DNA of 64,000 nt, from the IMG/VR virus record IMGVR_UViG_3300030503_000315, positions 62,001 to 126,000 of that record; one strand, given 5' to 3'. Shown here one piece after another: positions 6,754 to 56,337 of this stretch. A model generated the notes under the pieces. That model was not told where the DNA came from and did not search any database. It saw only the letters and a list, made by a program, of their open reading frames with translations. Every line of letters begins with the position of its first letter. The stretch's first letter is position 1. The position numbers and the translations under genes were made by a program.

Positions 6754-6791
6754 TCTTCGTCCTCTAGATATTTGTAGTAAAGCTTCTGGCC

Positions 6792-11591: not shown

Positions 11592-14265
11592 TAGCAGCTT
11601 GCGTTTTCAATTGCGACTCTCATATCCTGCACCACTTCTGCATACTTGAAACTCTTGCCTTGCCACGTGACCACTCGACTACGTTGATCGTACACCCCAG
11701 TATGATTCAGGTAGACAAATGTAATCATGTTAGCCCTCGTACTCTCTTCGAGATTTTATATCAATGCTGCATCGGGAAATCTCTTTACCTTCAAGTAAGA
11801 GGATTACGGAGCGTCCGTTGGGATCTGTGAATCCACCCTCTTCAACCTTGATCTCGAGATCATTCTTCAAAATCTCACGGCATATTGCTTCGATGCGCCA
11901 TATGGGCAACGTCATTTCTTGACCCCAGTATTTGCTCCAGCTTTGTTTCCATATTCGTTGTGGCGCTGGAAGGGTCGGCGCCACACGCCTGTCGTTCGGA
12001 ACGGGAAATTATTCCTCGTCTTTTCCCCCTGCCGTCTTCGGTGCCGCCTCATCTTCATCATATTTCATCAACAAAGTATCGAGTCTATTGCACCGGCTAC
12101 CTCGCATCTGCCTTCGAACACCGTAGTCATCAACACACCTCAGGAGATATAAAGCTTCCTCAAAATCTGCTTCGCCCATCATAGCTCTCTGTATTCTTCA
12201 TTCATGATTTTCACCAGGCTATTGGGTGATCGATTGATACTATCCTGTCGTTAGAGTCCGTGCTATTGATAGCCATCGCGACCCCAATCTTTGATGGAAG
12301 TTTTACAAAATCTTCGAAACTTATTTCTTTGCCCAGATAAGGCGCCAACTTATCCAGTTGGTTTTGAGTGAAAGAGTGGTCTTTCGGAATTTCAAGTCTC
12401 ATGATCTTCTCCTAAAAATCTTCTAGATCCTGTCTTCTTTCGTCCTCTTGAGCCTTCTTGTAAGCCTCCGCAAACTTAGAATCATTCACTTGGCCTTCTT
12501 GTACAAGGAAAACAACAAGCGCTCTTGCAGCAAAAGCTGCTTCTTCTGATCTATCTTGATTCCTATAACGAGCACCCGCGTAGTCACCATACTTAACATT
12601 GAAGTTATCCACTAATTCCTGCAATGTTTTACTCATGACCTCCTCCTTAGTTCGCCGCGCTTCTCGGCAGCTAGTTCACTGTCGGTTAGAAGTTGTAGTG
12701 GTCCTTTGTTGAAGGATGGACCTATACGTGACTGCAATTGTCGAAAATGCTCCTGCGCCCTGGCTTCACGTTCTGCCATCTCAGGACTCAGATATGGACG
12801 TGGTTCCGGATCCGGTGCAACGAATCGCTTCTCAACATGGTGAACTTCACGTCGCACCACAGGATACTGAGGCATCTTAGACCTATTGAACGCCTCAATG
12901 TCAGTCTTGCTTCTCTCCGTCCGAGCGAATCCAGAAGTCAGTGTTTTCAGTCTCTCTGCGTTGCATGAAAGTTGCAGGATCTCCTGTTCCCTCAACTGCT
13001 GGTTCTTCGATCTCTGCCTCGCAGCCTTCGCTTTCGATTTTAGACTCATGACCATACTCCTTAGTACCCGCCATCATCCGAATGATCTCATCCGCATCTG
13101 CATACGCGGCGTCAGTGTCAACTAATTTCTGTCGCTCCTGGATAAGCGCGGCCATAGGCCCTATCAGAATAGATACCTTACAAAGCCTATCCATATCATG
13201 AATACACCGGTCAAGTACTGCCAGGTTGCGGCACGCCCACTTTACATACAGGATGTGTAATCCGGGATTAGACTTCCGAAAATCACTTTCGTACTCTTTA
13301 GTCATGTCCGACTCCTTTATTTACCACTGTTCGAAATAGCGATTGATGGTCTGCGGATGGTCGTAAGTACGCCAGTCATGCTCGTTTTCAAACACGGCGA
13401 TAAGTGTCCGATTATTTCGACAGCACACCTCGTACACCCGCCCGGACACTGCCTGCACGACGAGACCAAAATCATCCCACACCTTGCAGATACGGCAGAG
13501 CTCCTTCTCGTGTCGTGCAGATGCGGCCGCGATCTCCTCCGGCATCTCCTCAGACATCCCAAGATTTATCAATTGAGGTTCAGGCATCGCCGGGTGTTTT
13601 GCTTGCCAGTCAGCCAGGTAGTTACGATATGCTTCAATCATCTTGCTCATTTTGTCCGGTCCTCGATACAAGTTATAGAACTGACTTGAGTTTTGCTAAC
13701 AGGTCCTCTATGCTTTCTACTTTGAGGTAGGTCTTACTAGACCTAGCTCCGTAAACTCCTATATGGACAGTTTTGTCTAGGAAATCTATCGATACTGTTG
13801 CCACCCTACCGTTCTTAGGCAGAATCAACGTGTCAGTGTAGAAGGTCACCCCAGACCCACTGATCTTTATGGAGAAATATTCCTCCAAAAACTCACGGAG
13901 TGTTTGAGACTCCGGTCTCAAGGCTGGTAACATATGCACTCCGTTTCGTTGGGAATGGCGAAGAGGGGCCCCGGTGGCCCCTCGTCTCTACTTTACAGCT
14001 TTGGGAATTCCAAAACATCGGGCAGGATACGTACGACTTGATAGTTCGTTGCCCGAGTCATGATGTACAAAACACCACTTCGGTCCTTCAACAACATCTT
14101 CAGGTCACGTTCGCGTTTTGCAGTCTTGGGAAGTTTTTCGACTTCCAGAATCAGTCCAACCTCGTTGTCCGAATCGTTCCACCACAGTTCCACCCACTGA
14201 CCTGCATGTAGGTCGAGTACGTTTACACCGTGTTTGTTGATACGCCAATCGGTTTTAACGACCAT
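11592..14265 (-). other. Run of small hypothetical CDS, including sub-60-aa ORFs not in the track (e.g. ~11592..11729, ~12007..12180)
   Basis: Tiling and SD sequences; includes 12211..12402, 12412..12636, 12633..13055, 12901..13305, 13321..13671, 13673..13933, 13993..14265. Confidence 0.55.
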
Positions 14266-15569: not shown

Positions 15570-15601
15570 AAAAGGGCTTCCTCTAAATTGAAGGAAGCCC
15601 T
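15570..15601 (-). terminator. Rho-independent terminator
   Basis: GGGCTTCCT/AGGAAGCCC stem followed by TTTT on the minus strand, just after 15621..16397. Confidence 0.7.
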
Positions 15602-15620: not shown

Positions 15621-16397
15621 TTACTGGTTGTCGCCGTTGAGGAAATTCGGATTTTCCTGGAACGCTTCGACTGCTGACAGGAAACCTTTGAATTTCGTCT
15701 CCGCGCGTTCGCTTGCAAATTTCCCTGTTGGCGTAAACTCCGACAGTGCCATTCCCCAATCCTTGACATTGTTCAGTCTAATGAACGCAGCACGTGCAAG
15801 TTCTTCCAACAAGATCAACTTCTCGGCCTGTGTGTGATCCTCCACCTGGACTATCCCTGCGGAGGCTCGATGCGGAATCACCGCTTCCATCATGTACGGT
15901 GAATCCATCAAAGGATTCAGGGACCAGGAATAGTCCCCGCCGTACTCATATAGATTGCCAAGAGCTACATTGTATTGTCGAAGCTGTTCACTGATAAATG
16001 CAGTCTTACCCCGCTCTGGAATGTCCATAGAGATGTCGCGCACGACCGCAAGGACAGAGGATGCTTGACGATAGCGATCTCCAACAAATACTCGAGCGCC
16101 GGAAGTGTTGTGCCCAAGCAGGAGATCCCCACGACCCATCACCCAGTCGACATCGTCATTTACGTTAGACAAGCCAATTGCAATCACGGGGAACCAATAA
16201 TCAATTTTCCAGTCTGGGTTGAGACGAAGCAGATGCTTCTCTACTGAATCAACACGATCTTGAATCGCTGTAGATTTGCGAAGTTCTCTAATTGTAGTAA
16301 ACATTTTGGATTTCCTTATAGAAGTTGAACAGTATCTTTCTTGCAGAGAGTAACGTATAACATATCTTTCGACTTCATGTAACCCACCACGGACCAC
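15621..16397 (-). CDS. Hypothetical protein
   Basis: Long ORF; true start is probably internal (MFTTIREL). Confidence 0.65.
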   Translation of the reverse strand: MVRGGLHEVERYVIRYSLQERYCSTSIRKSKMFTTIRELRKSTAIQDRVDSVEKHLLRLNPDWKIDYWFPVIAIGLSNVNDDVDWVMGRGDLLLGHNTSGARVFVGDRYRQASSVLAVVRDISMDIPERGKTAFISEQLRQYNVALGNLYEYGGDYSWSLNPLMDSPYMMEAVIPHRASAGIVQVEDHTQAEKLILLEELARAAFIRLNNVKDWGMALSEFTPTGKFASERAETKFKGFLSAVEAFQENPNFLNGDNQ

Positions 16398-16874
16398 TTA
16401 TTTCTGAACCTTAAGGTCGTACGCGTATGCAACGGTCGGCCAATCACATACTTCGTGCTTTCCAATTTTGCTGGGAACAAAACCACAACGGTAGAAGAAC
16501 GGCTCCACCAAACGATCTCCGTACTCGTTATCCGGGATAAGTTCCACCAACCTCTTACGCCCCGGAAGCCAACCTTTGCACAGACTGATAACCTGTTGAA
16601 TCGCTTGTTTGCCTATCCCAAATTTACGAGCCTCAGGCATGATCCCTGTCCAACGAAGGAACACATCTTCATCATTCTCCGGCTCGAAGAAGATTCCCGT
16701 GATGCCAACCACATTGAACCGGTTGATGATAAACAGAATCTGTCCTGTCTGGCAGTCTTCCTTCGAAGCTTCATACGCAAATGCACGATAAGGATCAGGC
16801 CAGATTTCCTCCAGTACCGGATATTCCTCGAAAGGATTTCTAACACCCGGATGCGGTACAATCAAATGTGCCAT
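16398..16874 (-). CDS. GNAT-family acetyltransferase
   Basis: Acetyl-CoA loop TGIMPEARKFGIGKQAI and FFYRCGF motif B; start at ATG 16874. Confidence 0.82.
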   Translation of the reverse strand: MAHLIVPHPGVRNPFEEYPVLEEIWPDPYRAFAYEASKEDCQTGQILFIINRFNVVGITGIFFEPENDEDVFLRWTGIMPEARKFGIGKQAIQQVISLCKGWLPGRKRLVELIPDNEYGDRLVEPFFYRCGFVPSKIGKHEVCDWPTVAYAYDLKVQK

Positions 16875-16884
16875 TACTTCGACC

Positions 16885-17238
16885 TCACTGTTCAATGACG
16901 ATTTTCGACCTCGAGCAACACGACAACAATTGCTCGTACACCTCAGGGTCCACGTTGATGCAACCATCCGTGATCGACTTCCTGTCTTCAACGCTGTCCG
17001 AATGAAGACGTTCCAAACGATGCTGCTTGGGCTTCAACAACCACACTCGATGTACTGCGTACACACCACTCTCATCTCTAGCAAAGGCTAAAACATCTCC
17101 TCCGTAACCCGGTGCCAAAATCCGACTATGCTGCAACACGAATGTTCCCACTGGAGTCCGAGGACCAACCAAAGCCGGGTAGCAATGATTGGCCCAACAG
17201 ATCACAGCAGCTGCAAGATGCACAACCACTGTATCCAT
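16885..17238 (-). CDS. L,D-transpeptidase (YkuD) catalytic-domain protein
   Basis: YAVHRVW...SITDGCINV catalytic His/Cys motif; TPVGTF loop. Confidence 0.82.
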   Translation of the reverse strand: MDTVVVHLAAAVICWANHCYPALVGPRTPVGTFVLQHSRILAPGYGGDVLAFARDESGVYAVHRVWLLKPKQHRLERLHSDSVEDRKSITDGCINVDPEVYEQLLSCCSRSKIVIEQ

Positions 17239-17241
17239 TAT

Positions 17242-18738
17242 TTACTCGTGCGCCGGGGTCTTGATAAGCGGCAGCGGATCGGCCGCTACATTCGGCGTCG
17301 TGATGAATGAGCCCAGATCGCACGGGAGAATCTGAACGGTCGTCACCATCTGTTGGATCGAACCCGATGCACCCATACCACCCTGACCCCAACCCCCGTT
17401 CGAACCACCGGTTCCGATTGCGATGTTACGTGCGCCCGCCAGACCGACAATCGCCGTAAACATCACCACCTGCGAACCGAAACGATGATAGCCTGTACCG
17501 CGGTAATCAACGAACGGAACATCATGATACATCTCGTTGCCATTCGCATCCAACACGGGAGCAACCGTATCTTCATGACCTTGCTCGAACTTAGAGTTGA
17601 TCACCAGACCAAAGTACGTGCCTTCCACCGTCTGCGACGTCTTTTGCATAAGCGGACCGCACGCCATCGTTTCCTTCACAATGTTGCCAACTGCGAGTTC
17701 AGAAGGCGGCGTTGCCGGAACAACTGGCGGGATGTAGATCGCCTTGTAGCTTGAGTTCGTATTCGCATTCACGATCGTGCCACTCGACAACGAACCATTC
17801 CCAACGTTCTGCCCGTTTGCGTTCGACTGCGCGCCACCCGTCAGGGATTGAGCCCCACCCGTGTTCGAGGATGCGATCTTGTTAGTCGAAGACTGGCCTT
17901 GCCCTTGACTCGAGTTACCACCCTTGCTCGTCGTGTTGACACTTCCGCTATTGGTCGTTGCCGACCCTCCCTTTGTGTCACCATTCCCAGCCGACACCAC
18001 ATTGCCTCCCGTGGTGGATGCATTTCCGCTCTTGGTTGATGCGGTGCCTCCATTCGTTGTCGAAGTACCACCGTTCGCAGTTCCGCCCGTGGTGGTAGCG
18101 TTACCGCTTGTTGCATTTCCACCCTTGGTGTTTGCAGTTCCACCGTTCGTCGTCGCCGCGCCAGAAGTGGAGGATGCTGCACCCGCGTTGCTGGATGAGT
18201 TCGAGTTGCCGGCATTTGTCGACGAGTTACCAGCTTGGGTTGATGCAGGACCGGATTGAACGTTGCCCGAGTTGGACGAATTGACATTGCCACCGCTGTT
18301 GTTATTGTTGTTTGCACTTGATGTCGATGCTCCGGTCGACAGATTGTTACCACCACTATTCGAGGTGGAAGCACCCGTGCTGTTATTGTTGTTCGACAGA
18401 TTACCTGTCGCCGAGCCCCCCGCACCACCCTGTGAGCTGTTGTTTGCCGAATTGCTCGAAGTGTTCGCGCCGTTCGACATCGTGTTCTGTGGATTGTTAC
18501 CGTTCGTGTTCGTGAAACTGTTCCCATTCGAATTGGCTGAGTTGCCCAACTGATTCGAACTGGAAGTGTTCGTGCTGTTCGAAGCTTGACTCGTTGTCGA
18601 AGGATTGCCAACGTTCTGTGTCGATTCGGAACACGATACTGCGCCAGTATCACAGGAGCCCGTCGACTGGCTAACTTGTGCGTGTGCGGCTGCATTGAAT
18701 GCCAGGACGACGATTGCTGCGAAAATGGTCTTGTTCAT
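17242..18738 (-). CDS. Exported G/S/T/N-rich repeat protein with a C-terminal globular domain
   Basis: Signal peptide MNKTIFAAIVVLAFNAAAHA-Q; about 300 aa of low complexity with xxTxGG(T/N) repeats. Confidence 0.8.
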   Translation of the reverse strand: MNKTIFAAIVVLAFNAAAHAQVSQSTGSCDTGAVSCSESTQNVGNPSTTSQASNSTNTSSSNQLGNSANSNGNSFTNTNGNNPQNTMSNGANTSSNSANNSSQGGAGGSATGNLSNNNNSTGASTSNSGGNNLSTGASTSSANNNNNSGGNVNSSNSGNVQSGPASTQAGNSSTNAGNSNSSSNAGAASSTSGAATTNGGTANTKGGNATSGNATTTGGTANGGTSTTNGGTASTKSGNASTTGGNVVSAGNGDTKGGSATTNSGSVNTTSKGGNSSQGQGQSSTNKIASSNTGGAQSLTGGAQSNANGQNVGNGSLSSGTIVNANTNSSYKAIYIPPVVPATPPSELAVGNIVKETMACGPLMQKTSQTVEGTYFGLVINSKFEQGHEDTVAPVLDANGNEMYHDVPFVDYRGTGYHRFGSQVVMFTAIVGLAGARNIAIGTGGSNGGWGQGGMGASGSIQQMVTTVQILPCDLGSFITTPNVAADPLPLIKTPAHE

Positions 18739-18843
18739 TTTTCAGGTCCAATAGCTAAAGTGTGATTGAGAAATACGAAAGTACAACGAACCCCGCCCCG
18801 CGCTATACTACATTGCTCATTCCACGTACATCACTCTAATACG

Positions 18844-19155
18844 TTATTCCTTGTCCTTCTCTTTTTTGATCTTTTTCTGCTTCGGCAACTTTAGCCGCAC
18901 GCAGATTACCTGGTTGTTGATCTTACGGAATACGTCCGATTTATCTTTGTCGAGGTAATACTCATGCGAAACTGAGTCGACTACCAACTTCACATTCTCA
19001 TGCGGACCCCCAATACCCTGTAGTGTTGTGAATGTTACTTCCTGACCAACGATGGGTAAAACATCTGGCTCTAACGTCATCAAGATTTGATCTTCCCACA
19101 ACCATGTCACCTGACAGTGAATCATAGTTTGTACCTCTTTTGGAATTGTTCCCAT
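18844..19155 (-). CDS. Hypothetical protein
   Basis: ORF coupled to the ligase stop. Confidence 0.6.
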   Translation of the reverse strand: MGTIPKEVQTMIHCQVTWLWEDQILMTLEPDVLPIVGQEVTFTTLQGIGGPHENVKLVVDSVSHEYYLDKDKSDVFRKINNQVICVRLKLPKQKKIKKEKDKE

Positions 19156-21008
19156 GTCATTGCACGATCCCCAGCCTTCGCTACCTTCGTTGATGCCTTA
19201 CCACCTTCCTTATAGAGAAGGACCGTAGTCTTACTTGAGAACGATGAAGCAACTTCGCCACCATCCATCTCCACTAGTGCTTCTTCCTTTTTATCTCTGT
19301 AACCAGTCCACACAACTGTCACGCCTGCAAGTTTCCCTGCCTTCGCCTTCTTAACCGTAGGTAGTGATCCGTCCACCGACAACGTTTTCCGATAGGGTTC
19401 AAACCACTTCTTGAAGAAGATCAAGCCCTCAATCAAAGCTCGCGTCGTCTTATCTGAGAATCCTTTGATTGCAAGAATTGCTTGCGAGTTCCACTTACCG
19501 AGTAATAAATCACTCATCGAAATCCCTGCATCCTCCAACAACTTCAACTTGCGTTCACCGATGCCGTTCTCGAAACATCCAGATGCAACCATCAACTTCT
19601 TCAGATTGATTTGCCTACTCAGTACTCGATGAAGTTCCTCAAGTATCTTGATCTTCAGATTGTCACCCAACTTGGCATTTTTGATGCCAGACTTTCCCCA
19701 GTCGAGTGTCTTGCAGCTCCCAAGCTCGATATAGTTGTACAGGCCGATGTAACCTACATCATACAATTTTTCGATTGTCTTCTCTGCCAGGAATTCGATT
19801 CCAAGTGTCGTCAGGAAGTGATGAATCTTCTGTACCCGCGTTGCTTTGTCCTCTTCTGCTGCGTAGAAGAACCGACCACGCAACTCGTACTCACCCGGTG
19901 GACCCTTGAACTTTGCTTTCTTCACCACACCAACGATCTTCGGGATAACACCACCCGAACGCAATACCTTGAGTATTGCGCCTCGGCCGACGCCCATATC
20001 CTTCATCCATCCCGGATTGTGCGCAGTCACATAAGTGACTGTAACTCCGTCCATCACCGTCGGCTTGATTCGAATCTTGCATGACCAACGATTCAGTCGT
20101 GTCTTCTCCCAGATTTCCTCTAGCGCTTCTACTTCCGCTGCACTTTCTTCGTCATTCAACTTGAACGCGATCACTTCCTTTGGCTTGTCTGCGCTGGCGT
20201 ACTTCATCACCCAATTGGAAGGACCTCGCACCGTGCCATCGATCTCGTACAGCGATACTTTACGACGAATCTCGAGAAACTCCTTATGATCCTCGGCGTT
20301 GAACTCAAGTTCCGTAACAATGTGATCTACTACTTGATGTCCCCACTCCATTGCATCTTGCAACCCGGAGGACAGTGCCCTTCCATACACACCAAGGACA
20401 ACCATATCGACATGCTTCAACGCTTCGTGCTGTTCCTTCTTGTTGAAGATACCGTTTACCAGATTACGTGCATTATCATACTTAGATGACCAGTATTTCT
20501 GGAACACTCTCTTCTGCATCACACCTTCAACACGAAACACGACACGATTCCGTGCCGAAATACGTTCTGGAATTCGTCCGAGCTTAACCAGCCATGGTAT
20601 GAAGAATGATATATCGCCGCCATTCGTTCCATCACCCCGGGTGATCAATCTCACAGGTTCACCGTGGTGGTAGATCAACTGAAGACTTGTGCCGTCCAGC
20701 TTGTCCATGTCGATCCAGTAGACCACCTTTCTACTGCTGGAACGTTTATAGAACTTCGTCACGTCCTCCGGATACATCTTGTTCAAACTAGGCATGAACT
20801 CTTCGAGAGGAACCTCGGTCTTCTTGTTCGCGACCTTAACACCCGTCTTCTTCAACTCTTTCCACTTCGGATCAATTCTCTTGATCTCATCTTCCAGCGA
20901 ATCGAACATTGCATCGGTCATGACAGGTTGACCGTTGTAGTAAGCTTCCTTAGCCTTCACGTACTTCTTCTTCGCAGTCTCGATATTGGAGATCCCGATA
21001 GCCATCAT
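19122..21008 (-). CDS. ligA: NAD+-dependent DNA ligase
   Basis: Domain Ia AYYNGQPVMTDAMFD, KLDG adenylation motif, IDGTV, OB domain with GGVIPKI, HhH, C-terminal BRCT (VVWTG); no Cys4 zinc finger. Confidence 0.92.
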   Translation of the reverse strand: MMAIGISNIETAKKKYVKAKEAYYNGQPVMTDAMFDSLEDEIKRIDPKWKELKKTGVKVANKKTEVPLEEFMPSLNKMYPEDVTKFYKRSSSRKVVYWIDMDKLDGTSLQLIYHHGEPVRLITRGDGTNGGDISFFIPWLVKLGRIPERISARNRVVFRVEGVMQKRVFQKYWSSKYDNARNLVNGIFNKKEQHEALKHVDMVVLGVYGRALSSGLQDAMEWGHQVVDHIVTELEFNAEDHKEFLEIRRKVSLYEIDGTVRGPSNWVMKYASADKPKEVIAFKLNDEESAAEVEALEEIWEKTRLNRWSCKIRIKPTVMDGVTVTYVTAHNPGWMKDMGVGRGAILKVLRSGGVIPKIVGVVKKAKFKGPPGEYELRGRFFYAAEEDKATRVQKIHHFLTTLGIEFLAEKTIEKLYDVGYIGLYNYIELGSCKTLDWGKSGIKNAKLGDNLKIKILEELHRVLSRQINLKKLMVASGCFENGIGERKLKLLEDAGISMSDLLLGKWNSQAILAIKGFSDKTTRALIEGLIFFKKWFEPYRKTLSVDGSLPTVKKAKAGKLAGVTVVWTGYRDKKEEALVEMDGGEVASSFSSKTTVLLYKEGGKASTKVAKAGDRAMTWEQFQKRYKL

Positions 21009-22034
21009 TCTTCCCCACAGTATAAACAAGTGTACTCGTATCTACGAGGGCTCCCGCATGTCTCGCATGGTACTACCCGGATGGCATAGGTCTCGCGCAA
21101 ATTCTTCTCTCGCTTCCTATATAGTTTACCATCCTGCTTGATCTTACGCGGACTGCGTTTCGCTTCCATCTGCATCCTCCTCTGGTGCGCACAATGTTGC
21201 AAATGCATCTGGTAGATTTTGCTCCTCCAACTGATCCCACTGAACCTCAGTCATTTCCAAACACCGACAATCCTCGGCGCGCATCAACCAGTCAGCCCAG
21301 TAGATAGTGTCGGCTTTCTTGAATTCTGGCAGGAGGAACGCGTTATCTTCCACAATAGCTTTCTCTATTGCTTCGAACTTCGTGGGATCATAAACGTAGA
21401 TATGGTAATGATCTCTCAGACGCTCTTCGGTGCAGTCAACCCACGATACGATCGCCTTCCGCCCATCCGGCAATGTATGAATCCACATGAGTGGACCATC
21501 ATAGTAGTAGTACAGCAAATCTACGTCTGTATCTGAACTTGCATGAATATCACCCGCAATAGCGGGGTCAACGGGAATTCCACGTAAAGGAATCATTTTT
21601 CTTCCTTGTCTTCGATGAGTTCAAGTTCGAACTCAGAGTAGTAACATGATATGGCGCCTCCATCAGCTAGTACCCGATACGGGTACAGGTCATCCTTTTC
21701 ATCGACGGATACGACGGTGCCTTCGCCTTGTGCCTGTGGCGGCAAGAATTTAACCCTGTCCTTCAGAGCGAACTTCATATTAATCCTGCCCGCCGCATGC
21801 GGCTTCAGCAGATACTGCGCGAGCATCGGCATCCTGTTGTGCTGCATCATGCGCTCTACGAACAAGATTGCATGCCTGTTGTCCTTCACCGTTGAAGGTC
21901 AGAAGACGAACGATTTCCACCAGTGCATTCTTCAGCTGTTGAGATCCGTGGTTGGGTCCCCACTCTTCATTCGATTCATACCCAGTGTCAGTCTCGATAC
22001 TGACCTTTACAAAACTTTTCACGATCTTGCTCAT
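21005..22034 (-). other. Hypothetical CDS run (21005..21208 with CxxC..CxxC, 21144..21596, 21593..~21785, 21780..22034)
   Basis: Tiled ORFs. Confidence 0.6.
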
Positions 22035-40939: not shown

Positions 40940-40980
40940 GGGGCACCGCCGTTTGCCGACCATGCCCCAACTATTTACTA
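40940..40980 (-). promoter_or_regulatory. Class B motif TAGTAAATA (40972-40980) followed by a 5' hairpin
   Basis: Exact motif also at 44832, 47236 and 57266; GGGGCA/TGCCCC stem directly downstream. Confidence 0.62.
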
Positions 40981-40989
40981 CAGTAAAGT

Positions 40990-47235: not shown

Positions 47236-47244
47236 TATTTACTA
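47236..47244 (-). promoter_or_regulatory. Class B motif TAGTAAATA
   Basis: Intergenic, followed by a GGGGA/TCCCC hairpin, upstream of the H1-like gene. Confidence 0.62.
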
Positions 47245-47310
47245 CATCTTGCTGCAAGGTGCAACCTATACTACCCATCAAATCGTTGCTTGTTTAAATT
47301 GGCGGATGCG

Positions 47311-55075: not shown

Positions 55076-56337
55076 TCACTCGGCAGAGTTTTCCTCATTA
55101 TACGGATCGAGATTGGGTACATTCATCAATGCATGTACAAACGGAAGGACATTCGAAAGCTCGGTGATATTGCACTTGGCAGAATGATACGGAGACCACG
55201 AACCTCCTTTGGACAACTCAAGGAGGAAGTGTACGTATCCAGGTTCTATGTACTTGGGTGGGCGCTCCATGCCGGGAGCTGACTTGCCATACACTACTTT
55301 ACCTTTCGGATTATCGAATGTCAACGAGATCCGAATACGCCCCAGCTTCCACTGCACCTTAGGCAACACCTGTTCGTCAGCTTCGAGATTTATGATAGGC
55401 ATCTTGTTGCTATCGAACTTGAAGTCGACGTGAAACTTAATCCGCTTACCCGACGCAGATTCCGAGTACTGTGGAGTGTACGCGAATCCCCAACGAGAGA
55501 AGAAGTTGTGCAGGAGCTGCTCCAGCTTCGGCATAGCTTCCTTCGCGGCCTTGATCTTTTCGGGATCTGTAGCTAGGAATGTCATCTCAGAATTAGAGAT
55601 CAGACACTTGCCATACTTCTTCTTCCACGTCGCGGCTAACATCTCCACAAACGGGTCCATCAATTCTTCCTCGAAAGGAACTTCCTTCCCTACAATACCA
55701 TGAGACTTTGTGATTAGTCTCAAGGTAGGGATAAACGTGTGATGGATTCGTAGAAGTGGAACTCCCAGCTTCTTCAACGTCTTGTACGTCTCGAAGTCAA
55801 CCGGGAAGTACCACTGCTTGATACGCGTCAAACGAATCTCATTGGGATCGAGATTCGACTTGACTTCCTCAGGCTCTGGTGGTGGGGCCGGGATCACTTC
55901 TACCACTTCCTTGCCATCTTCAACTTTCAACTCTGCTTGATTTACTACAGGCAACTTCAACCTCTTCTTGATTGAAGTCTTTGATGCGGGTTTCGTTTCC
56001 GCTTTTGCCTTCATTGGTCGACACCTCTGTCTTTGGATTCAAGGTAGTAGTAAAAGCGCTCGATGAACGCCGGGCTTTGCTTATTAACAAGTTGTAGCAC
56101 ATTCGCTTCAGCTACAGGGTTTCTGGAATTTCTGGCTGCCATCACCTGCTTGGCATATTTCCTTGCGCGGCCGACAACAATGATCTGAACTTCGCCCGCC
56201 GGGCAATCCTCGTTCCCTTTCGAGAAATGACATTTCGCATACTTCTTGGGTTCATCGGGGTCCAGGTGGCCGCACTTTTTGCACAGCGGGCTGTAAACCT
56301 CGAGATAGTCCTTGTTATCCACTTTACCACCTCTCAC
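55076..56337 (-). other. Two hypothetical CDS (55076..56014; 56011..~56320 with Cys/His motifs)
   Basis: Tiled ORFs upstream of the topoisomerase genes. Confidence 0.65.

What the first reader, a model, noticed from the sequence alone, without database searches (positions are those of the whole stretch)
16398..18738. Phage-encoded exported beta-solenoid/amyloid-like repeat protein co-transcribed with an L,D-transpeptidase and a GNAT
Seen: a 498-aa protein with a clean signal peptide, an N/S/Q/G-rich stretch, then about 12 near-heptad repeats (ATTNGGT, ANTKGGN, ATTTGGT, STTNGGT, ASTKSGN, ASTTGGN...) at about 17940-18190, and a Cys-containing C-terminal domain. The YkuD gene starts 3 nt after its stop and the GNAT follows. 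Known: G/S/N/Q-rich exported repeats form functional amyloids (CsgA, FapC), Thr-array beta-solenoids bind ice or surfaces, and YkuD enzymes remodel or anchor proteins to peptidoglycan. Inference: an envelope or biofilm modification module, for example receptor masking, superinfection exclusion or host-fitness cargo.
Basis: partly seen in the sequence, partly recalled or inferred. Interest (0 to 1): 0.62.

Follow-up and report, generated by a model that had tools for sequence, protein, structure and literature searches.

The report
Phage cell-wall anchoring gene pair
A jumbo phage carries a two-gene cassette (an exported protein ending in a short basic tag, then a miniature cell-wall transpeptidase-like enzyme) that recurs in phages and some bacteria with many unrelated exported proteins and probably fastens them to the host cell wall; the suspected amyloid or solenoid repeat is a variable spacer.

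Summary
The three genes exist as described, on the minus strand. They are a 498-aa exported protein (17242-18738), a 117-aa YkuD-fold protein starting 3 nt later (16885-17238), and a GNAT (16398-16874).

The beta-solenoid/amyloid reading is not supported. The heptad-like block is a local, irregular part of a 300-residue S/N/G/T low-complexity spacer. It is absent from the closest relatives and modelled with low confidence.

The GNAT is not part of the unit. The first two genes are an obligate pair:
- the same 13 of 50,697 phage records hold both genes;
- 11 of 11 bacterial loci hold both;
- the start and stop codons often overlap.

Searching outward from the enzyme showed that its upstream partner can be any of at least six unrelated exported proteins. 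One is the Neisseria BamE-domain lipoprotein Mlp. What they share is an extreme C-terminal tail, consensus V-E-V-P-x-K-(K/R)-I-(R/K)-(E/Q).

My best reading is a tag plus a dedicated mini L,D-transpeptidase that tethers exported cargo to peptidoglycan, like the Lpp box. The chemistry is untested. The phage enzyme also lacks a cleavable signal peptide, which remains unexplained. The pair looks uncharacterised and is mostly phage-borne.

The parts
17242..18738 (-). Gene 1: 498-aa exported protein (P0001). Order of parts: signal peptide, Cys loop, low-complexity spacer, conserved beta domain, basic C-terminal tail.
   Evidence: ORF and translation. Family of 269 representative clusters. No Pfam, PHROG, NCBIfam or PADLOC hit.
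18679..18738 (-). Signal-peptide-like N-terminus (residues 1-20, with an A-H-A|Q cleavage-type site).
   Evidence: Read from the sequence. Relatives have the same n/h/c layout. One relative (L008) has a lipobox instead.
18631..18654 (-). Conserved Cys-x6-Cys loop just after the signal peptide (C29, C36).
   Evidence: Alignment A1.
17779..18678 (-). S/N/G/T-rich low-complexity spacer (residues 21-320). It holds a few conserved Gly/Asn positions (G108, G112, N113).
   Evidence: Composition. Variable length in A1. ESM Atlas whole-protein pLDDT 0.45.
17938..18189 (-). It is a local, irregular period-7 stretch inside the spacer.
   Evidence: Autocorrelation z 4.8 at lag 7 only. TRF finds 2.5 copies of a 21-nt unit. 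The block is an insertion relative to the closest homologues.
17299..17751 (-). Conserved all-beta C-terminal domain (residues about 330-480). It has invariant C360/C473 and a long Gly-rich hairpin tipped by W450.
   Evidence: AlphaFold2 on a 116-sequence alignment: pLDDT 86.7, with strands at residues 93-123 and 129-159 of the modelled segment (P0001 322-490), i.e. P0001 residues 414-444 and 450-480. No significant fold match in PDB, ESM Atlas or BFVD outside its own family.
17245..17298 (-). C-terminal linker and basic tail (residues 481-498, ending ...I-K-T-P-A-H-E). This is a degenerate copy of the family tail V-E-V-P-x-K-(K/R)-I-(R/K)-(E/Q)-COOH.
   Evidence: Alignment A5. Tail statistics over 61 partners.
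16885..17238 (-). Gene 2: 117-aa minimal YkuD-fold protein (P0002). Invariant H63, T90-x-G92-C93-x-N95, Y45-G-G-D48, C14 and C19. No cleavable signal peptide.
   Evidence: Pfam YkuD 19.7 bits, below cut-off; 29 of 41 relatives hit YkuD weakly. phrog_38499, E 3e-45. ESM Atlas model pLDDT 0.91, with TM 0.92 to small periplasmic LDT-like clusters and 0.74 to PG_binding_1+YkuD proteins. Invariant columns.
16398..16874 (-). Gene 3: 158-aa GNAT acetyltransferase. It is a neighbour, not part of the conserved module.
   Evidence: Pfam Acetyltransf_1, E 4e-6, above cut-off. Start and Shine-Dalgarno site. Absent from all other loci. A 36%-identical homologue occurs in Burkholderia phage BCSR5, which lacks the pair.
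18804..18812 (-). TGTAGTATA motif 66 nt upstream of gene 1; a possible phage promoter element.
   Evidence: The pattern TGTAGTAWA occurs 6 times in the window against 0.35 expected. Three of the four minus-strand copies lie in intergenic gaps upstream of genes. Function not tested.
15573..15601 (-). Terminator-like hairpin (11 pairs plus a T run). It is the first strong one downstream of the three genes, after the following 227-258-aa ORF.
   Evidence: Consensus scan.

Best explanation
Genes 1 and 2 form a self-contained, mostly phage-borne cassette: a 'tagged cargo plus dedicated mini L,D-transpeptidase'.

Gene 1 is exported by Sec and folds in the periplasm; two conserved Cys pairs suggest disulfides. 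It consists of a long disordered S/N/G/T spacer, an elongated all-beta head domain of unknown function, and a short basic C-terminal tail.

Gene 2, usually translationally coupled to gene 1, is a stripped-down YkuD-fold Cys/His enzyme. It recognises that tail. Most likely it uses standard L,D-transpeptidase chemistry to link the conserved tail lysine (position -5 in the consensus) to a peptidoglycan stem peptide. That would plant the cargo covalently on the host cell wall, as LdtA-C do with the 'Lpp box' of Braun lipoprotein and OutB.

The low-complexity region, including the heptad-like block, is a flexible tether of variable length, not a solenoid or amyloid core. The GNAT is an unrelated neighbour.

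Shown here: the gene pair is obligate; the tail is the only feature shared by at least six unrelated partner classes; the enzyme has a YkuD fold with invariant Cys and His; close homologues in Neisseria carry signal peptides.

Inferred: tail recognition by the enzyme, covalent linkage to peptidoglycan, how the signal-less phage enzyme reaches the periplasm, and the benefit to the phage. Candidate benefits are envelope stabilisation, or a cell-wall-anchored shield against superinfection.
For: Co-occurrence:
- The same 13 of 50,697 phage records carry both genes, adjacent to each other. They span at least four unrelated phage types.
- 11 of 11 bacterial genome loci and 21 of 23 distinct loci overall have the enzyme downstream.
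- 9 of 21 junctions overlap by 4 nt, and 17 of 21 are 11 nt or less apart.
- No third gene is conserved.

The shared tail:
- Starting from the enzyme, 60 IMG/VR loci were found. Only 8 have the gene-1 domain upstream; 45 have other upstream ORFs. Those inspected are exported proteins of several unrelated classes, and none has a Pfam hit.
- In Neisseria the partner is the BamE-domain lipoprotein Mlp.
- Over 61 distinct partners, the last 12 residues give V-x-V-E-V-P-x-K-(K/R)-I-(R/K/G)-(E/Q/G). Lys is at -5 in 43 of 61.
- A simple tail rule is met by 45 of 61 partners against 77 of 947 control ORFs from the same loci.
- The two gene-1 homologues without a downstream enzyme (L008, L010) also lack the tail.

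The enzyme:
- YkuD fold and invariant H63/C93.
- The Neisseria homologues (E 1e-35 to 1e-38) have clear Sec signal peptides, which places the family's action in the periplasm.
- In the signal-less family the homologous first 22 residues are uncharged and hydrophobic: mean Kyte-Doolittle hydropathy 1.57 with 0.6 charged residues (n=176). The Neisseria proteins score 0.0-0.46 with 4-6 charged residues. This fits an uncleaved export segment.

Precedent: a 6-residue basic C-terminal Lpp box is necessary and sufficient for L,D-transpeptidase-mediated attachment of OutB, and of a beta-lactamase reporter, to peptidoglycan (PMC12274547).
Against: - P0002 and about 1,100 relatives have no cleavable signal peptide. 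The N-terminus is part of the fold (TM 0.92 over residues 1-116).
- The hydrophobic N-terminal segment lacks the positive n-region expected of a signal anchor; N-flank net charge is -0.36.
- The active-site motif is atypical. His lies 30 residues before Cys rather than 14-17. Asp/Asn replaces the second His. Asn replaces the Arg after Cys (canonical motif from PMC9638812).
- Pfam and PDB sequence searches do not reach significance.
- Known Lpp boxes need a C-terminal Lys. Here the chain ends in E/Q/G.
- The Lys is not universal. Some tails have only Arg or His, and P0001's own tail is degenerate.
- No biochemical or expression data exist.
Confidence: 0.45

Rival explanations
1. Non-covalent docking or control. 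The tail is a docking or inhibitory peptide that sits in the enzyme's cleft. The exported partner would recruit, position or neutralise the mini-YkuD enzyme (immunity-like, as Tldi1 does for the signal-less effector Tlde1) rather than being linked to peptidoglycan.
For: - An exported partner paired with a signal-less peptidoglycan-type enzyme, with overlapping stop and start codons, is the layout of periplasm-acting effector/immunity pairs (PMC9638812).
- The ESM Atlas feature search places P0002 near a largely viral Tlde1-domain cluster, at a weak score of 0.83.
- The gene-1 head carries a conserved Gly-rich hairpin that could plug an active site.
Against: - Partners are extremely diverse in fold and size while only the tail is conserved. 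This fits a tag better than a specific inhibitor.
- No T6SS, T4SS or other delivery genes lie next to any of the loci examined.
- Lytic phages of several types keep both genes.
- The Neisseria enzyme has its own signal peptide, so it needs no immunity logic.
Confidence: 0.2
2. Tail as acyl donor, or tail processing. The enzyme removes the last residue or residues of the tail, as L,D-transpeptidases remove D-Ala4. It then either transfers the new C-terminus to an amine (sortase-like, for example to mDAP) or simply matures the partner.
For: - The terminal residue is variable but restricted: E, Q or G in 50 of 61 partners. The -2 to -5 positions before it are conserved. This resembles a leaving group after a recognition motif.
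- Some tails lack Lys altogether, for example the Neisseria sicca type ending H-R-I-R-R. Lys as acceptor cannot explain those.
Against: No YkuD enzyme is known to use an all-L protein C-terminus as donor; this rests on my knowledge of the family. Lys at -5 is the best-conserved tail position.
Confidence: 0.12
3. Cytoplasmic or lysis-time enzyme. P0002 stays in the cytoplasm and acts on muropeptide precursors, or it reaches the wall only when a holin opens the membrane, for example to cut L,D cross-links or protein-peptidoglycan tethers at lysis. Gene 1 would be an indirectly related envelope protein.
For: - There is no signal peptide anywhere in the roughly 114-aa family.
- L,D cross-links inhibit transglycosylase-type endolysins (PMC11390936), so an L,D-specific helper would be useful to a phage.
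Against: - The pair sits beside DNA-metabolism genes (ligase, ThyX), not lysis genes.
- It also occurs alone among ordinary chromosomal genes of bacteria.
- This reading does not explain the tail shared by all partners, or the signal peptide on the Neisseria homologues.
Confidence: 0.1
4. The S/N/G/T repeats fold into a beta-solenoid or functional amyloid (like CsgA or FapC, or ice-binding proteins) that coats or masks the envelope. YkuD and the GNAT would be co-acting modifiers.
For: The composition is N/S/G/Q-rich and prion-like, and there is a local period-7 signal. Several other partner classes also carry G/N/S/T-rich regions, so the region has some recurring role.
Against: - The repeat block is missing from the nearest relatives.
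- The region's length and sequence are not conserved.
- It has only 17 hydrophobic residues in 300.
- There is no curlin or other repeat family hit.
- ESM Atlas gives pLDDT 0.45 for the whole protein.
- The GNAT is not conserved with the pair.
Confidence: 0.05

Closest known systems
Braun lipoprotein Lpp (and OutB) with the L,D-transpeptidases LdtA/B/C; the 'Lpp box'
   Same: A YkuD-fold Cys enzyme is paired with an exported protein whose short basic extreme C-terminus is the recognition and attachment element. The box is portable between unrelated proteins (PMC12274547), as the tail is here.
   Different: - The tail here ends in E/Q/G, with the conserved Lys at -5 rather than at the C-terminus.
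- The enzyme is a 114-117-aa bare catalytic domain encoded next to its substrate, with an atypical motif and, in phages, no signal peptide.
- The cargo is diverse and mostly phage-encoded.
- Covalent linkage is not demonstrated.
Sortase with LPXTG (and similar C-terminal sorting tags)
   Same: The logic is the same: a Cys transpeptidase and a C-terminal tag shared by many unrelated cargo proteins that end up on the cell wall.
   Different: The fold differs (YkuD, not sortase). The setting is Gram-negative and phage. The tag has no hydrophobic membrane segment. The enzyme and each cargo are encoded as a two-gene unit.
Tlde1/Tldi1 (T6SS L,D-transpeptidase-like effector and its periplasmic immunity protein)
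   Same: A small signal-less L,D-transpeptidase-fold enzyme with disulfide-prone cysteines is encoded next to a Sec-exported partner (PMC9638812).
   Different: No secretion-system genes lie nearby. The partner is upstream, very diverse, and defined by a tail. There is no Pfam Tlde1_dom hit. The pair occurs in lytic phages.
SAR (signal-anchor-release) endolysins such as P1 Lyz and R21
   Same: A phage enzyme of a peptidoglycan-acting fold has a weakly hydrophobic N-terminal segment that is also part of the folded domain. Cysteines lie inside that segment (the SAR comparison rests on my knowledge of the field).
   Different: There is no positive n-region, the hydropathy is borderline (mean best 19-residue window 1.58), and release has not been tested. 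The same arrangement exists in bacterial chromosomes without holins.
CsgA/FapC functional amyloids and Thr-array beta-solenoids
   Same: An exported protein with a G/S/N/Q/T-rich region.
   Different: There are no conserved repeat units, no family hit, almost no hydrophobic positions, and the region varies freely in length among homologues.

Membership tests
YkuD / L,D-transpeptidase catalytic domain (PF03734) | Profile score above Pfam's gathering threshold | tested here: not met
   19.7 bits against a cut-off of 23.4 (E 1.3e-3). 18.5 bits in the six-frame search. 29 of 41 relatives match only weakly, best E 1.2e-4.
YkuD / L,D-transpeptidase catalytic domain (PF03734) | YkuD beta-sandwich fold | tested here: met
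   ESM Atlas model of P0002 has pLDDT 0.91. TM is 0.92 to small 'periplasmic protein/L,D-transpeptidase' clusters and 0.74 (102 residues) to PG_binding_1+YkuD proteins. I did not build a model of my own.
YkuD / L,D-transpeptidase catalytic domain (PF03734) | Catalytic motif H-x(14-17)-(S/T)-H-G-C-h-R | tested here: inconclusive
   T90-D-G92-C93-I-N95 is present, and Cys, Gly and His63 are invariant. However, His lies 30 residues upstream, the second His is Asp/Asn, and the Arg is an invariant Asn (motif as given in PMC9638812).
YkuD / L,D-transpeptidase catalytic domain (PF03734) | Export to the periplasm (signal peptide, lipobox or membrane anchor) | tested here: not met
   P0002 starts at the first strand of the domain. 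An in-frame TAA lies 6 nt upstream. All of the roughly 114-aa relatives are alike. The 143-147-aa Neisseria homologues do have signal peptides.
L,D-transpeptidase activity on peptidoglycan or protein | Formation or cleavage of mDAP-linked bonds | not testable with these tools
   Needs muropeptide analysis.
Lpp-box type peptidoglycan-anchored proteins | Short basic tail at the extreme C-terminus, shared by unrelated proteins | tested here: met
   Consensus V-E-V-P-x-K-(K/R)-I-(R/K)-(E/Q). The tail rule is met by 45 of 61 partners against 77 of 947 controls.
Lpp-box type peptidoglycan-anchored proteins | C-terminal Lys as the attachment residue | tested here: not met
   The last residue is E, Q or G in 50 of 61 partners. 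P0001 ends in H-E.
GNAT acetyltransferase (PF00583), gene 3 | Profile score above threshold | tested here: met
   27.5 bits against 20.7, E 4e-6.
Curli/Fap functional amyloid | Conserved imperfect repeats matching a curlin or Fap profile | tested here: not met
   No Pfam hit at E up to 1. The repeat block is not conserved in homologues.
Beta-solenoid repeat protein | Regular repeat register and a confident solenoid model | tested here: not met
   There is signal at lag 7 only, with none at 14 or 21. Whole-protein ESM Atlas pLDDT is 0.45. I did not fold the region on its own.
T6SS effector/immunity pair (Tlde1/Tldi1) | Linkage to secretion-system genes, or a Tlde1_dom match | tested here: not met
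   No such neighbours. No PF10908 hit.
Anti-phage defence systems (PADLOC) | Match to a known defence protein model | tested here: not met
   No hits for any of the three proteins.

The most novel reading that the evidence does not exclude
Phages of Gram-negative bacteria, and a few bacteria including Neisseria, possess a dedicated protein-sorting system. It consists of a C-terminal 'V-E-V-P-x-K-K-I-R-E' tag and a cognate miniature L,D-transpeptidase encoded immediately downstream. Together they covalently plant a wide repertoire of otherwise unrelated exported proteins on peptidoglycan. This would be a Gram-negative, largely viral counterpart of sortase/LPXTG. In phages the enzyme would be exported through a non-cleaved N-terminal segment that is part of its own fold.
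Probability: 0.33. Interest if true: 0.85.

Novelty: new variant of a known kind. Interest (0 to 1): 0.68.

Why it matters
If the tail and mini-enzyme pair really anchors proteins to peptidoglycan, several things follow.

- It would define a portable, two-gene cell-wall tagging system used by many phages to decorate the host envelope during infection or lysogeny. This part of phage biology is almost unexplored.
- It would give function to hundreds of 'hypothetical' phage gene pairs.
- It would point to an unrecognised outer-membrane-to-wall tether in Neisseria: the Mlp lipoprotein with its neighbouring L,D-transpeptidase-like gene.
- It would offer a small genetic tool for fixing periplasmic proteins to the sacculus.
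- It poses a clean question: how does a signal-less wall enzyme reach the periplasm?

Even if anchoring is wrong, the strict association of one short C-terminal motif with one enzyme family across unrelated proteins is a solid comparative-genomic signal. It is directly testable.

Tried and rejected
Complex and structure:
- Complex prediction of the gene-1 C-terminal domain with P0002 returned 'no verdict'. Scores were 0.43, 0.46 and 0.24, and one control scored 0.50. It is not used as evidence either way.
- The first fold, with a 13-sequence alignment, was poor (pLDDT 58.7). It was replaced by the 116-sequence model.
- Fold searches of that model gave nothing significant outside the family:
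  - Foldseek against PDB: best E 0.09, to pore-forming toxin hairpins.
  - VIA-align against 48,161 chains: best Z 4.2.
  - ESM Atlas: TM 0.34 or less.
  - BFVD: only two family members.
  I therefore do not claim a pore-former or any other known fold.

Sequence searches against PDB and protein-family libraries:
- Sequence and profile searches against PDB found nothing for the domain, the YkuD-like profile or P0002.
- Pfam, PHROGs, NCBIfam and PADLOC gave nothing for gene 1.
- Pfam gave nothing for the other partner classes.

- The search for related loci with the wide alignment A3 failed for lack of conserved stretches; A2 was used instead.
- A megablast of the region against the phage collection found nothing.

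Ideas tested and dropped:
- A fusion protein joining the gene-1 domain and YkuD was sought among 160 family members and not found.
- Read-through of the in-frame TAA-ATA-ATG junction was rejected as a general mechanism, because the frame relation is not conserved.
- The upstream intergenic RNA has no unusual structure (z +1.4).

Literature: searches for a described phage mini-L,D-transpeptidase or this tail found nothing.

Genome sampling: the class-level sample found no further copies.
Full report
WHAT IS IN THE WINDOW. The window is bases 62001-126000 of a 215,315-bp IMG/VR virus record estimated 91% complete. Genes run almost entirely on the minus strand, and GC skew is negative throughout. 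The NAD-dependent DNA ligase just upstream (19122-21029) is 54% identical to that of Ralstonia phage phiRSL1. It is 44-47% identical to the ligases of Burkholderia jumbo phages BcepSauron, BcepSaruman and BCSR5. The element is therefore a jumbo phage of a Burkholderiales host.

The three ORFs of the finding are real:
- P0001: 498 aa, 17242-18738.
- P0002: 117 aa, 16885-17238. It starts 3 nt after the P0001 stop, in the same frame (TAA-ATA-ATG).
- A GNAT whose plausible start is the ATG at 16874. That gives 158 aa, with GAGG 8 nt upstream and a start 10 nt after the P0002 stop.

No convincing terminator separates them. The first strong terminator-like hairpin on this strand is at 15573-15601, after the next gene. 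A short motif, TGTAGTAWA, is enriched in the window (6 copies against 0.35 expected). One copy lies 66 nt upstream of P0001.

THE REPEAT REGION. Residues 21-320 of P0001 are S 23%, N 20%, G 18%, T 14% and A 10%, with 8 charged and 17 hydrophobic residues in 300. There is nothing at lags 14 or 21, so the units vary in length. TRF sees only 2.5 copies of a 21-nt unit.

In an alignment with 18 homologues this block is an insertion that even the 66-75%-identical Burkholderia proteins lack. The low-complexity region ranges from a few dozen to about 350 residues. The ESM Atlas model of the whole protein has pLDDT 0.45, and no curlin or other repeat profile matches.

I conclude that it is a flexible spacer. 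It does contain a few conserved positions (a Cys-x6-Cys loop after the signal peptide; G108, G112, N113), so it is not featureless. I could not fold it separately.

THE CONSERVED PART OF GENE 1. Residues about 322-480 form a family with 269 representative clusters at E up to 1e-3, of which 228 are below 1e-10. The family has no Pfam, PHROG, NCBIfam or PADLOC match and no PDB relative by sequence.

With a 116-sequence alignment AlphaFold2 gives a confident all-beta model: pLDDT 86.7, with two 31-residue strands forming a long hairpin. The distal half of the hairpin is Gly-rich. It carries conserved Arg-Asn and Trp-Gly-Gln. C360 and C473 are invariant.

No library gave a significant fold match. 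The weak top rows are elongated sheets such as pore-forming toxins and cystine-knot factors, and I do not lean on them. The head domain's own function is unknown.

GENE 2. P0002 falls below Pfam's YkuD threshold (19.7 against 23.4 bits). However, 29 of 41 relatives hit YkuD weakly. The ESM Atlas model (pLDDT 0.91) superposes on small L,D-transpeptidase-like proteins at TM 0.92, and on canonical PG_binding_1+YkuD proteins at TM 0.74.

Invariant residues include H63, G92, C93, N95, Y45-G-G-D48, C14 and C19. The motif T-x-G-C-h-N, with His 30 residues upstream, departs from the canonical H-x(14-17)-(S/T)-H-G-C-h-R (PMC9638812). The family is large, with 1,101 clusters at 90% identity. The ESM Atlas cluster nearest P0002, probably its own, has 640 members, 77% of them viral.

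None of the roughly 114-aa members has a signal peptide; the chain begins at the first strand of the fold.

THE PAIR IS OBLIGATE; THE GNAT IS NOT PART OF IT.
- tblastn of each protein against 50,697 phage records finds the same 13 records, with the two genes adjacent in each. They are Xanthomonas jumbo phages XacN1, LucasX, Xoo-sp13 and the PhiXhv-12 group; phiXF1; and the Stenotrophomonas siphophages DLP3, DLP5 and Summit.
- All 11 bacterial loci found in species-representative genomes have the enzyme directly downstream. They come from Burkholderia, Variovorax, Sphingomonadaceae and Caulobacteraceae.
- Overall 21 of 23 distinct loci have it.
- Nine of 21 junctions overlap by 4 nt, and 17 of 21 are within 11 nt.
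- All-against-all comparison of the flanks finds no third conserved gene.
- The GNAT occurs at none of these loci. Its only phage homologue is in BCSR5, which lacks the pair.

In bacteria the pair is rare. It was found in 0 of 300 other Burkholderiales and 0 of 300 other Sphingomonadales sampled. It lies either among ordinary chromosomal genes, next to a prophage integrase, or among IS elements.

THE KEY LEAD: THE TAIL. Searching Burkholderiales-order genomes with the enzyme profile turned up three strong hits in genomes without any gene-1 domain. These are Neisseria genes. Each encodes a 143-147-aa homologue with an obvious Sec signal peptide. It is encoded 7-10 nt downstream of the lipoprotein Mlp, which has a lipobox and a BamE domain (E 1e-16). 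Mlp ends in ...E-V-A-P-E-T-P-H-R-I-R-R or ...E-I-V-P-A-T-P-K-R-I-R-Q. That is the same ending I had noticed in the gene-1 family (...V-E-V-P-A-K-R-I-R-Q).

I then fetched 60 IMG/VR loci with the enzyme profile. Only 8 have the gene-1 domain upstream. Forty-five have other upstream ORFs, and those inspected are signal-peptide proteins of several unrelated classes:
- a 135-150-aa two-Cys class;
- two 310-420-aa classes with their own G/N/S/T spacers and different Cys-containing heads;
- a Gly-rich/(T-T-P)n protein.

None has a Pfam hit. Nearly all end in the same tail. Over 61 distinct partners the last twelve residues read V-x-V-E-V-P-x-K-(K/R)-I-(R/K/G)-(E/Q/G). Lys is at -5 in 43 partners, a basic residue at -4 in 43, and Ile at -3 in 35.

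A crude rule requires two or more K/R/H in the last seven residues and a last residue of E, Q or G. It holds for 45 of 61 partners against 77 of 947 control ORFs of the same loci. Most 'failures' are evident variants. The two gene-1 homologues that lack a downstream enzyme (L008, L010) also lack the tail. P0001's own tail (...I-K-T-P-A-H-E) and those of its Burkholderia relatives (...T-K-I-H-Q) are degenerate versions.

INTERPRETATION. The only thing common to all partners of this enzyme family is export plus the tail, so the tail is what the enzyme works on or binds.

The closest precedent is the Lpp box. This is a six-residue basic C-terminus (V-R-T-Y-K-K) that is necessary and sufficient for L,D-transpeptidases to attach Lpp, OutB or a reporter to peptidoglycan (PMC12274547).

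I therefore favour a dedicated mini-transpeptidase that tethers tail-tagged cargo to the wall through the conserved Lys. The S/N/G/T region would act as a long leash for the head domain.

Two rivals remain open: a tail that only docks or inhibits, and a tail that acts as acyl donor. Some tails have no Lys, and the chain does not end in Lys.

What the phage gains is inferred only. The pair sits among early or DNA-metabolism genes and, in a prophage, beside the integrase. That fits envelope remodelling or exclusion functions rather than lysis. L,D cross-linking is known to blunt transglycosylase-type lysins (PMC11390936).

THE UNSOLVED POINT. The phage-type enzyme has no cleavable signal peptide. 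Two observations argue that it nevertheless acts outside the cytoplasm:
- The Neisseria homologues are exported.
- In the signal-less family the homologous first 22 residues have become uncharged and hydrophobic. Mean hydropathy is 1.57 with 0.6 charged residues (n=176), against 0.0-0.46 with 4-6 charges in Neisseria. That is what one would expect if the first strands double as an uncleaved export segment, as in SAR endolysins.

Against this, there is no positive n-region, and only 41% of members reach the classical 1.6 threshold. This needs experiment.

VERDICT. The duo belongs to a widespread, apparently undescribed, mostly viral cassette whose defining element is a C-terminal tag. No paper in the library describes it.

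Noticed in passing
L032:1480-2451 (-), L031:868-1839 (+), L033:1480-2445 (-) (Neisseria genomes): Neisseria species (N. sicca, N. cinerea, N. meningitidis and N. gonorrhoeae by cluster names) encode the BamE-domain lipoprotein Mlp, which carries the same C-terminal tail. A signal-peptide-bearing mini-YkuD gene follows directly. This could be an unrecognised outer-membrane-to-peptidoglycan tether in a genus thought to lack Braun lipoprotein.
   Followed up: partly
L044:2545-2943, L049:2570-2998, L062:2059-2997, L068:1715-2983, L077:1930-2925, L086:1337-2266, L040:2054-2974: At least four further classes of exported, Pfam-less proteins in viral contigs sit upstream of the same enzyme and end in the same tail. 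Three of the classes have their own G/N/S/T-rich spacers, so the spacer is a recurring architectural element.
   Followed up: partly
L008:3683-4630 and L010:3545-4600: Two viral homologues of gene 1 have no YkuD-like gene downstream, and both lack the canonical tail. The L008 protein has a lipobox instead of a plain signal peptide.
   Followed up: yes
proteins P0200, P0204, P0210, P0215, P0226, P0232, P0250: A subfamily of gene-1 homologues carries an extra 90-140-residue C-terminal extension with a conserved V-P-C...E-F-T-D-A...C motif in place of the short tail. Their gene neighbours were not examined.
   Followed up: no
window 18804-18812, 40974-40982, 47238-47246, 55941-55949 (-); 6773-6781, 16293-16301 (+): TGTAGTAWA occurs 6 times against 0.35 expected. 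Three of the four minus-strand copies lie in intergenic gaps upstream of genes. It may be a phage promoter element.
   Followed up: partly
window 17236-17244: P0001 and P0002 are in the same frame, separated only by TAA-ATA. The frame relation is not conserved in other loci, where ATGA/GTGA/TTGA overlaps dominate.
   Followed up: yes
window 15573-15601 (-): A strong terminator-like hairpin (11 pairs, 6 G-C, T run) follows the 227-258-aa ORF downstream of the GNAT. It suggests a transcription unit of at least four genes.
   Followed up: no
L003 (Stenotrophomonas phage Summit, MZ326862.1 78046-78390): The deposited annotation calls the YkuD-like gene as an 83-aa TTG-started fragment. The homology runs over the full 116 residues, starting at the upstream gene's stop codon.
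   Followed up: partly
window 1-64000: No tRNA or tmRNA genes were found in the 64-kb window. Most neighbouring ORFs (for example 18844-19155, 15621-16304, 13993-14265, 21144-21596) have no PHROG match.
   Followed up: no
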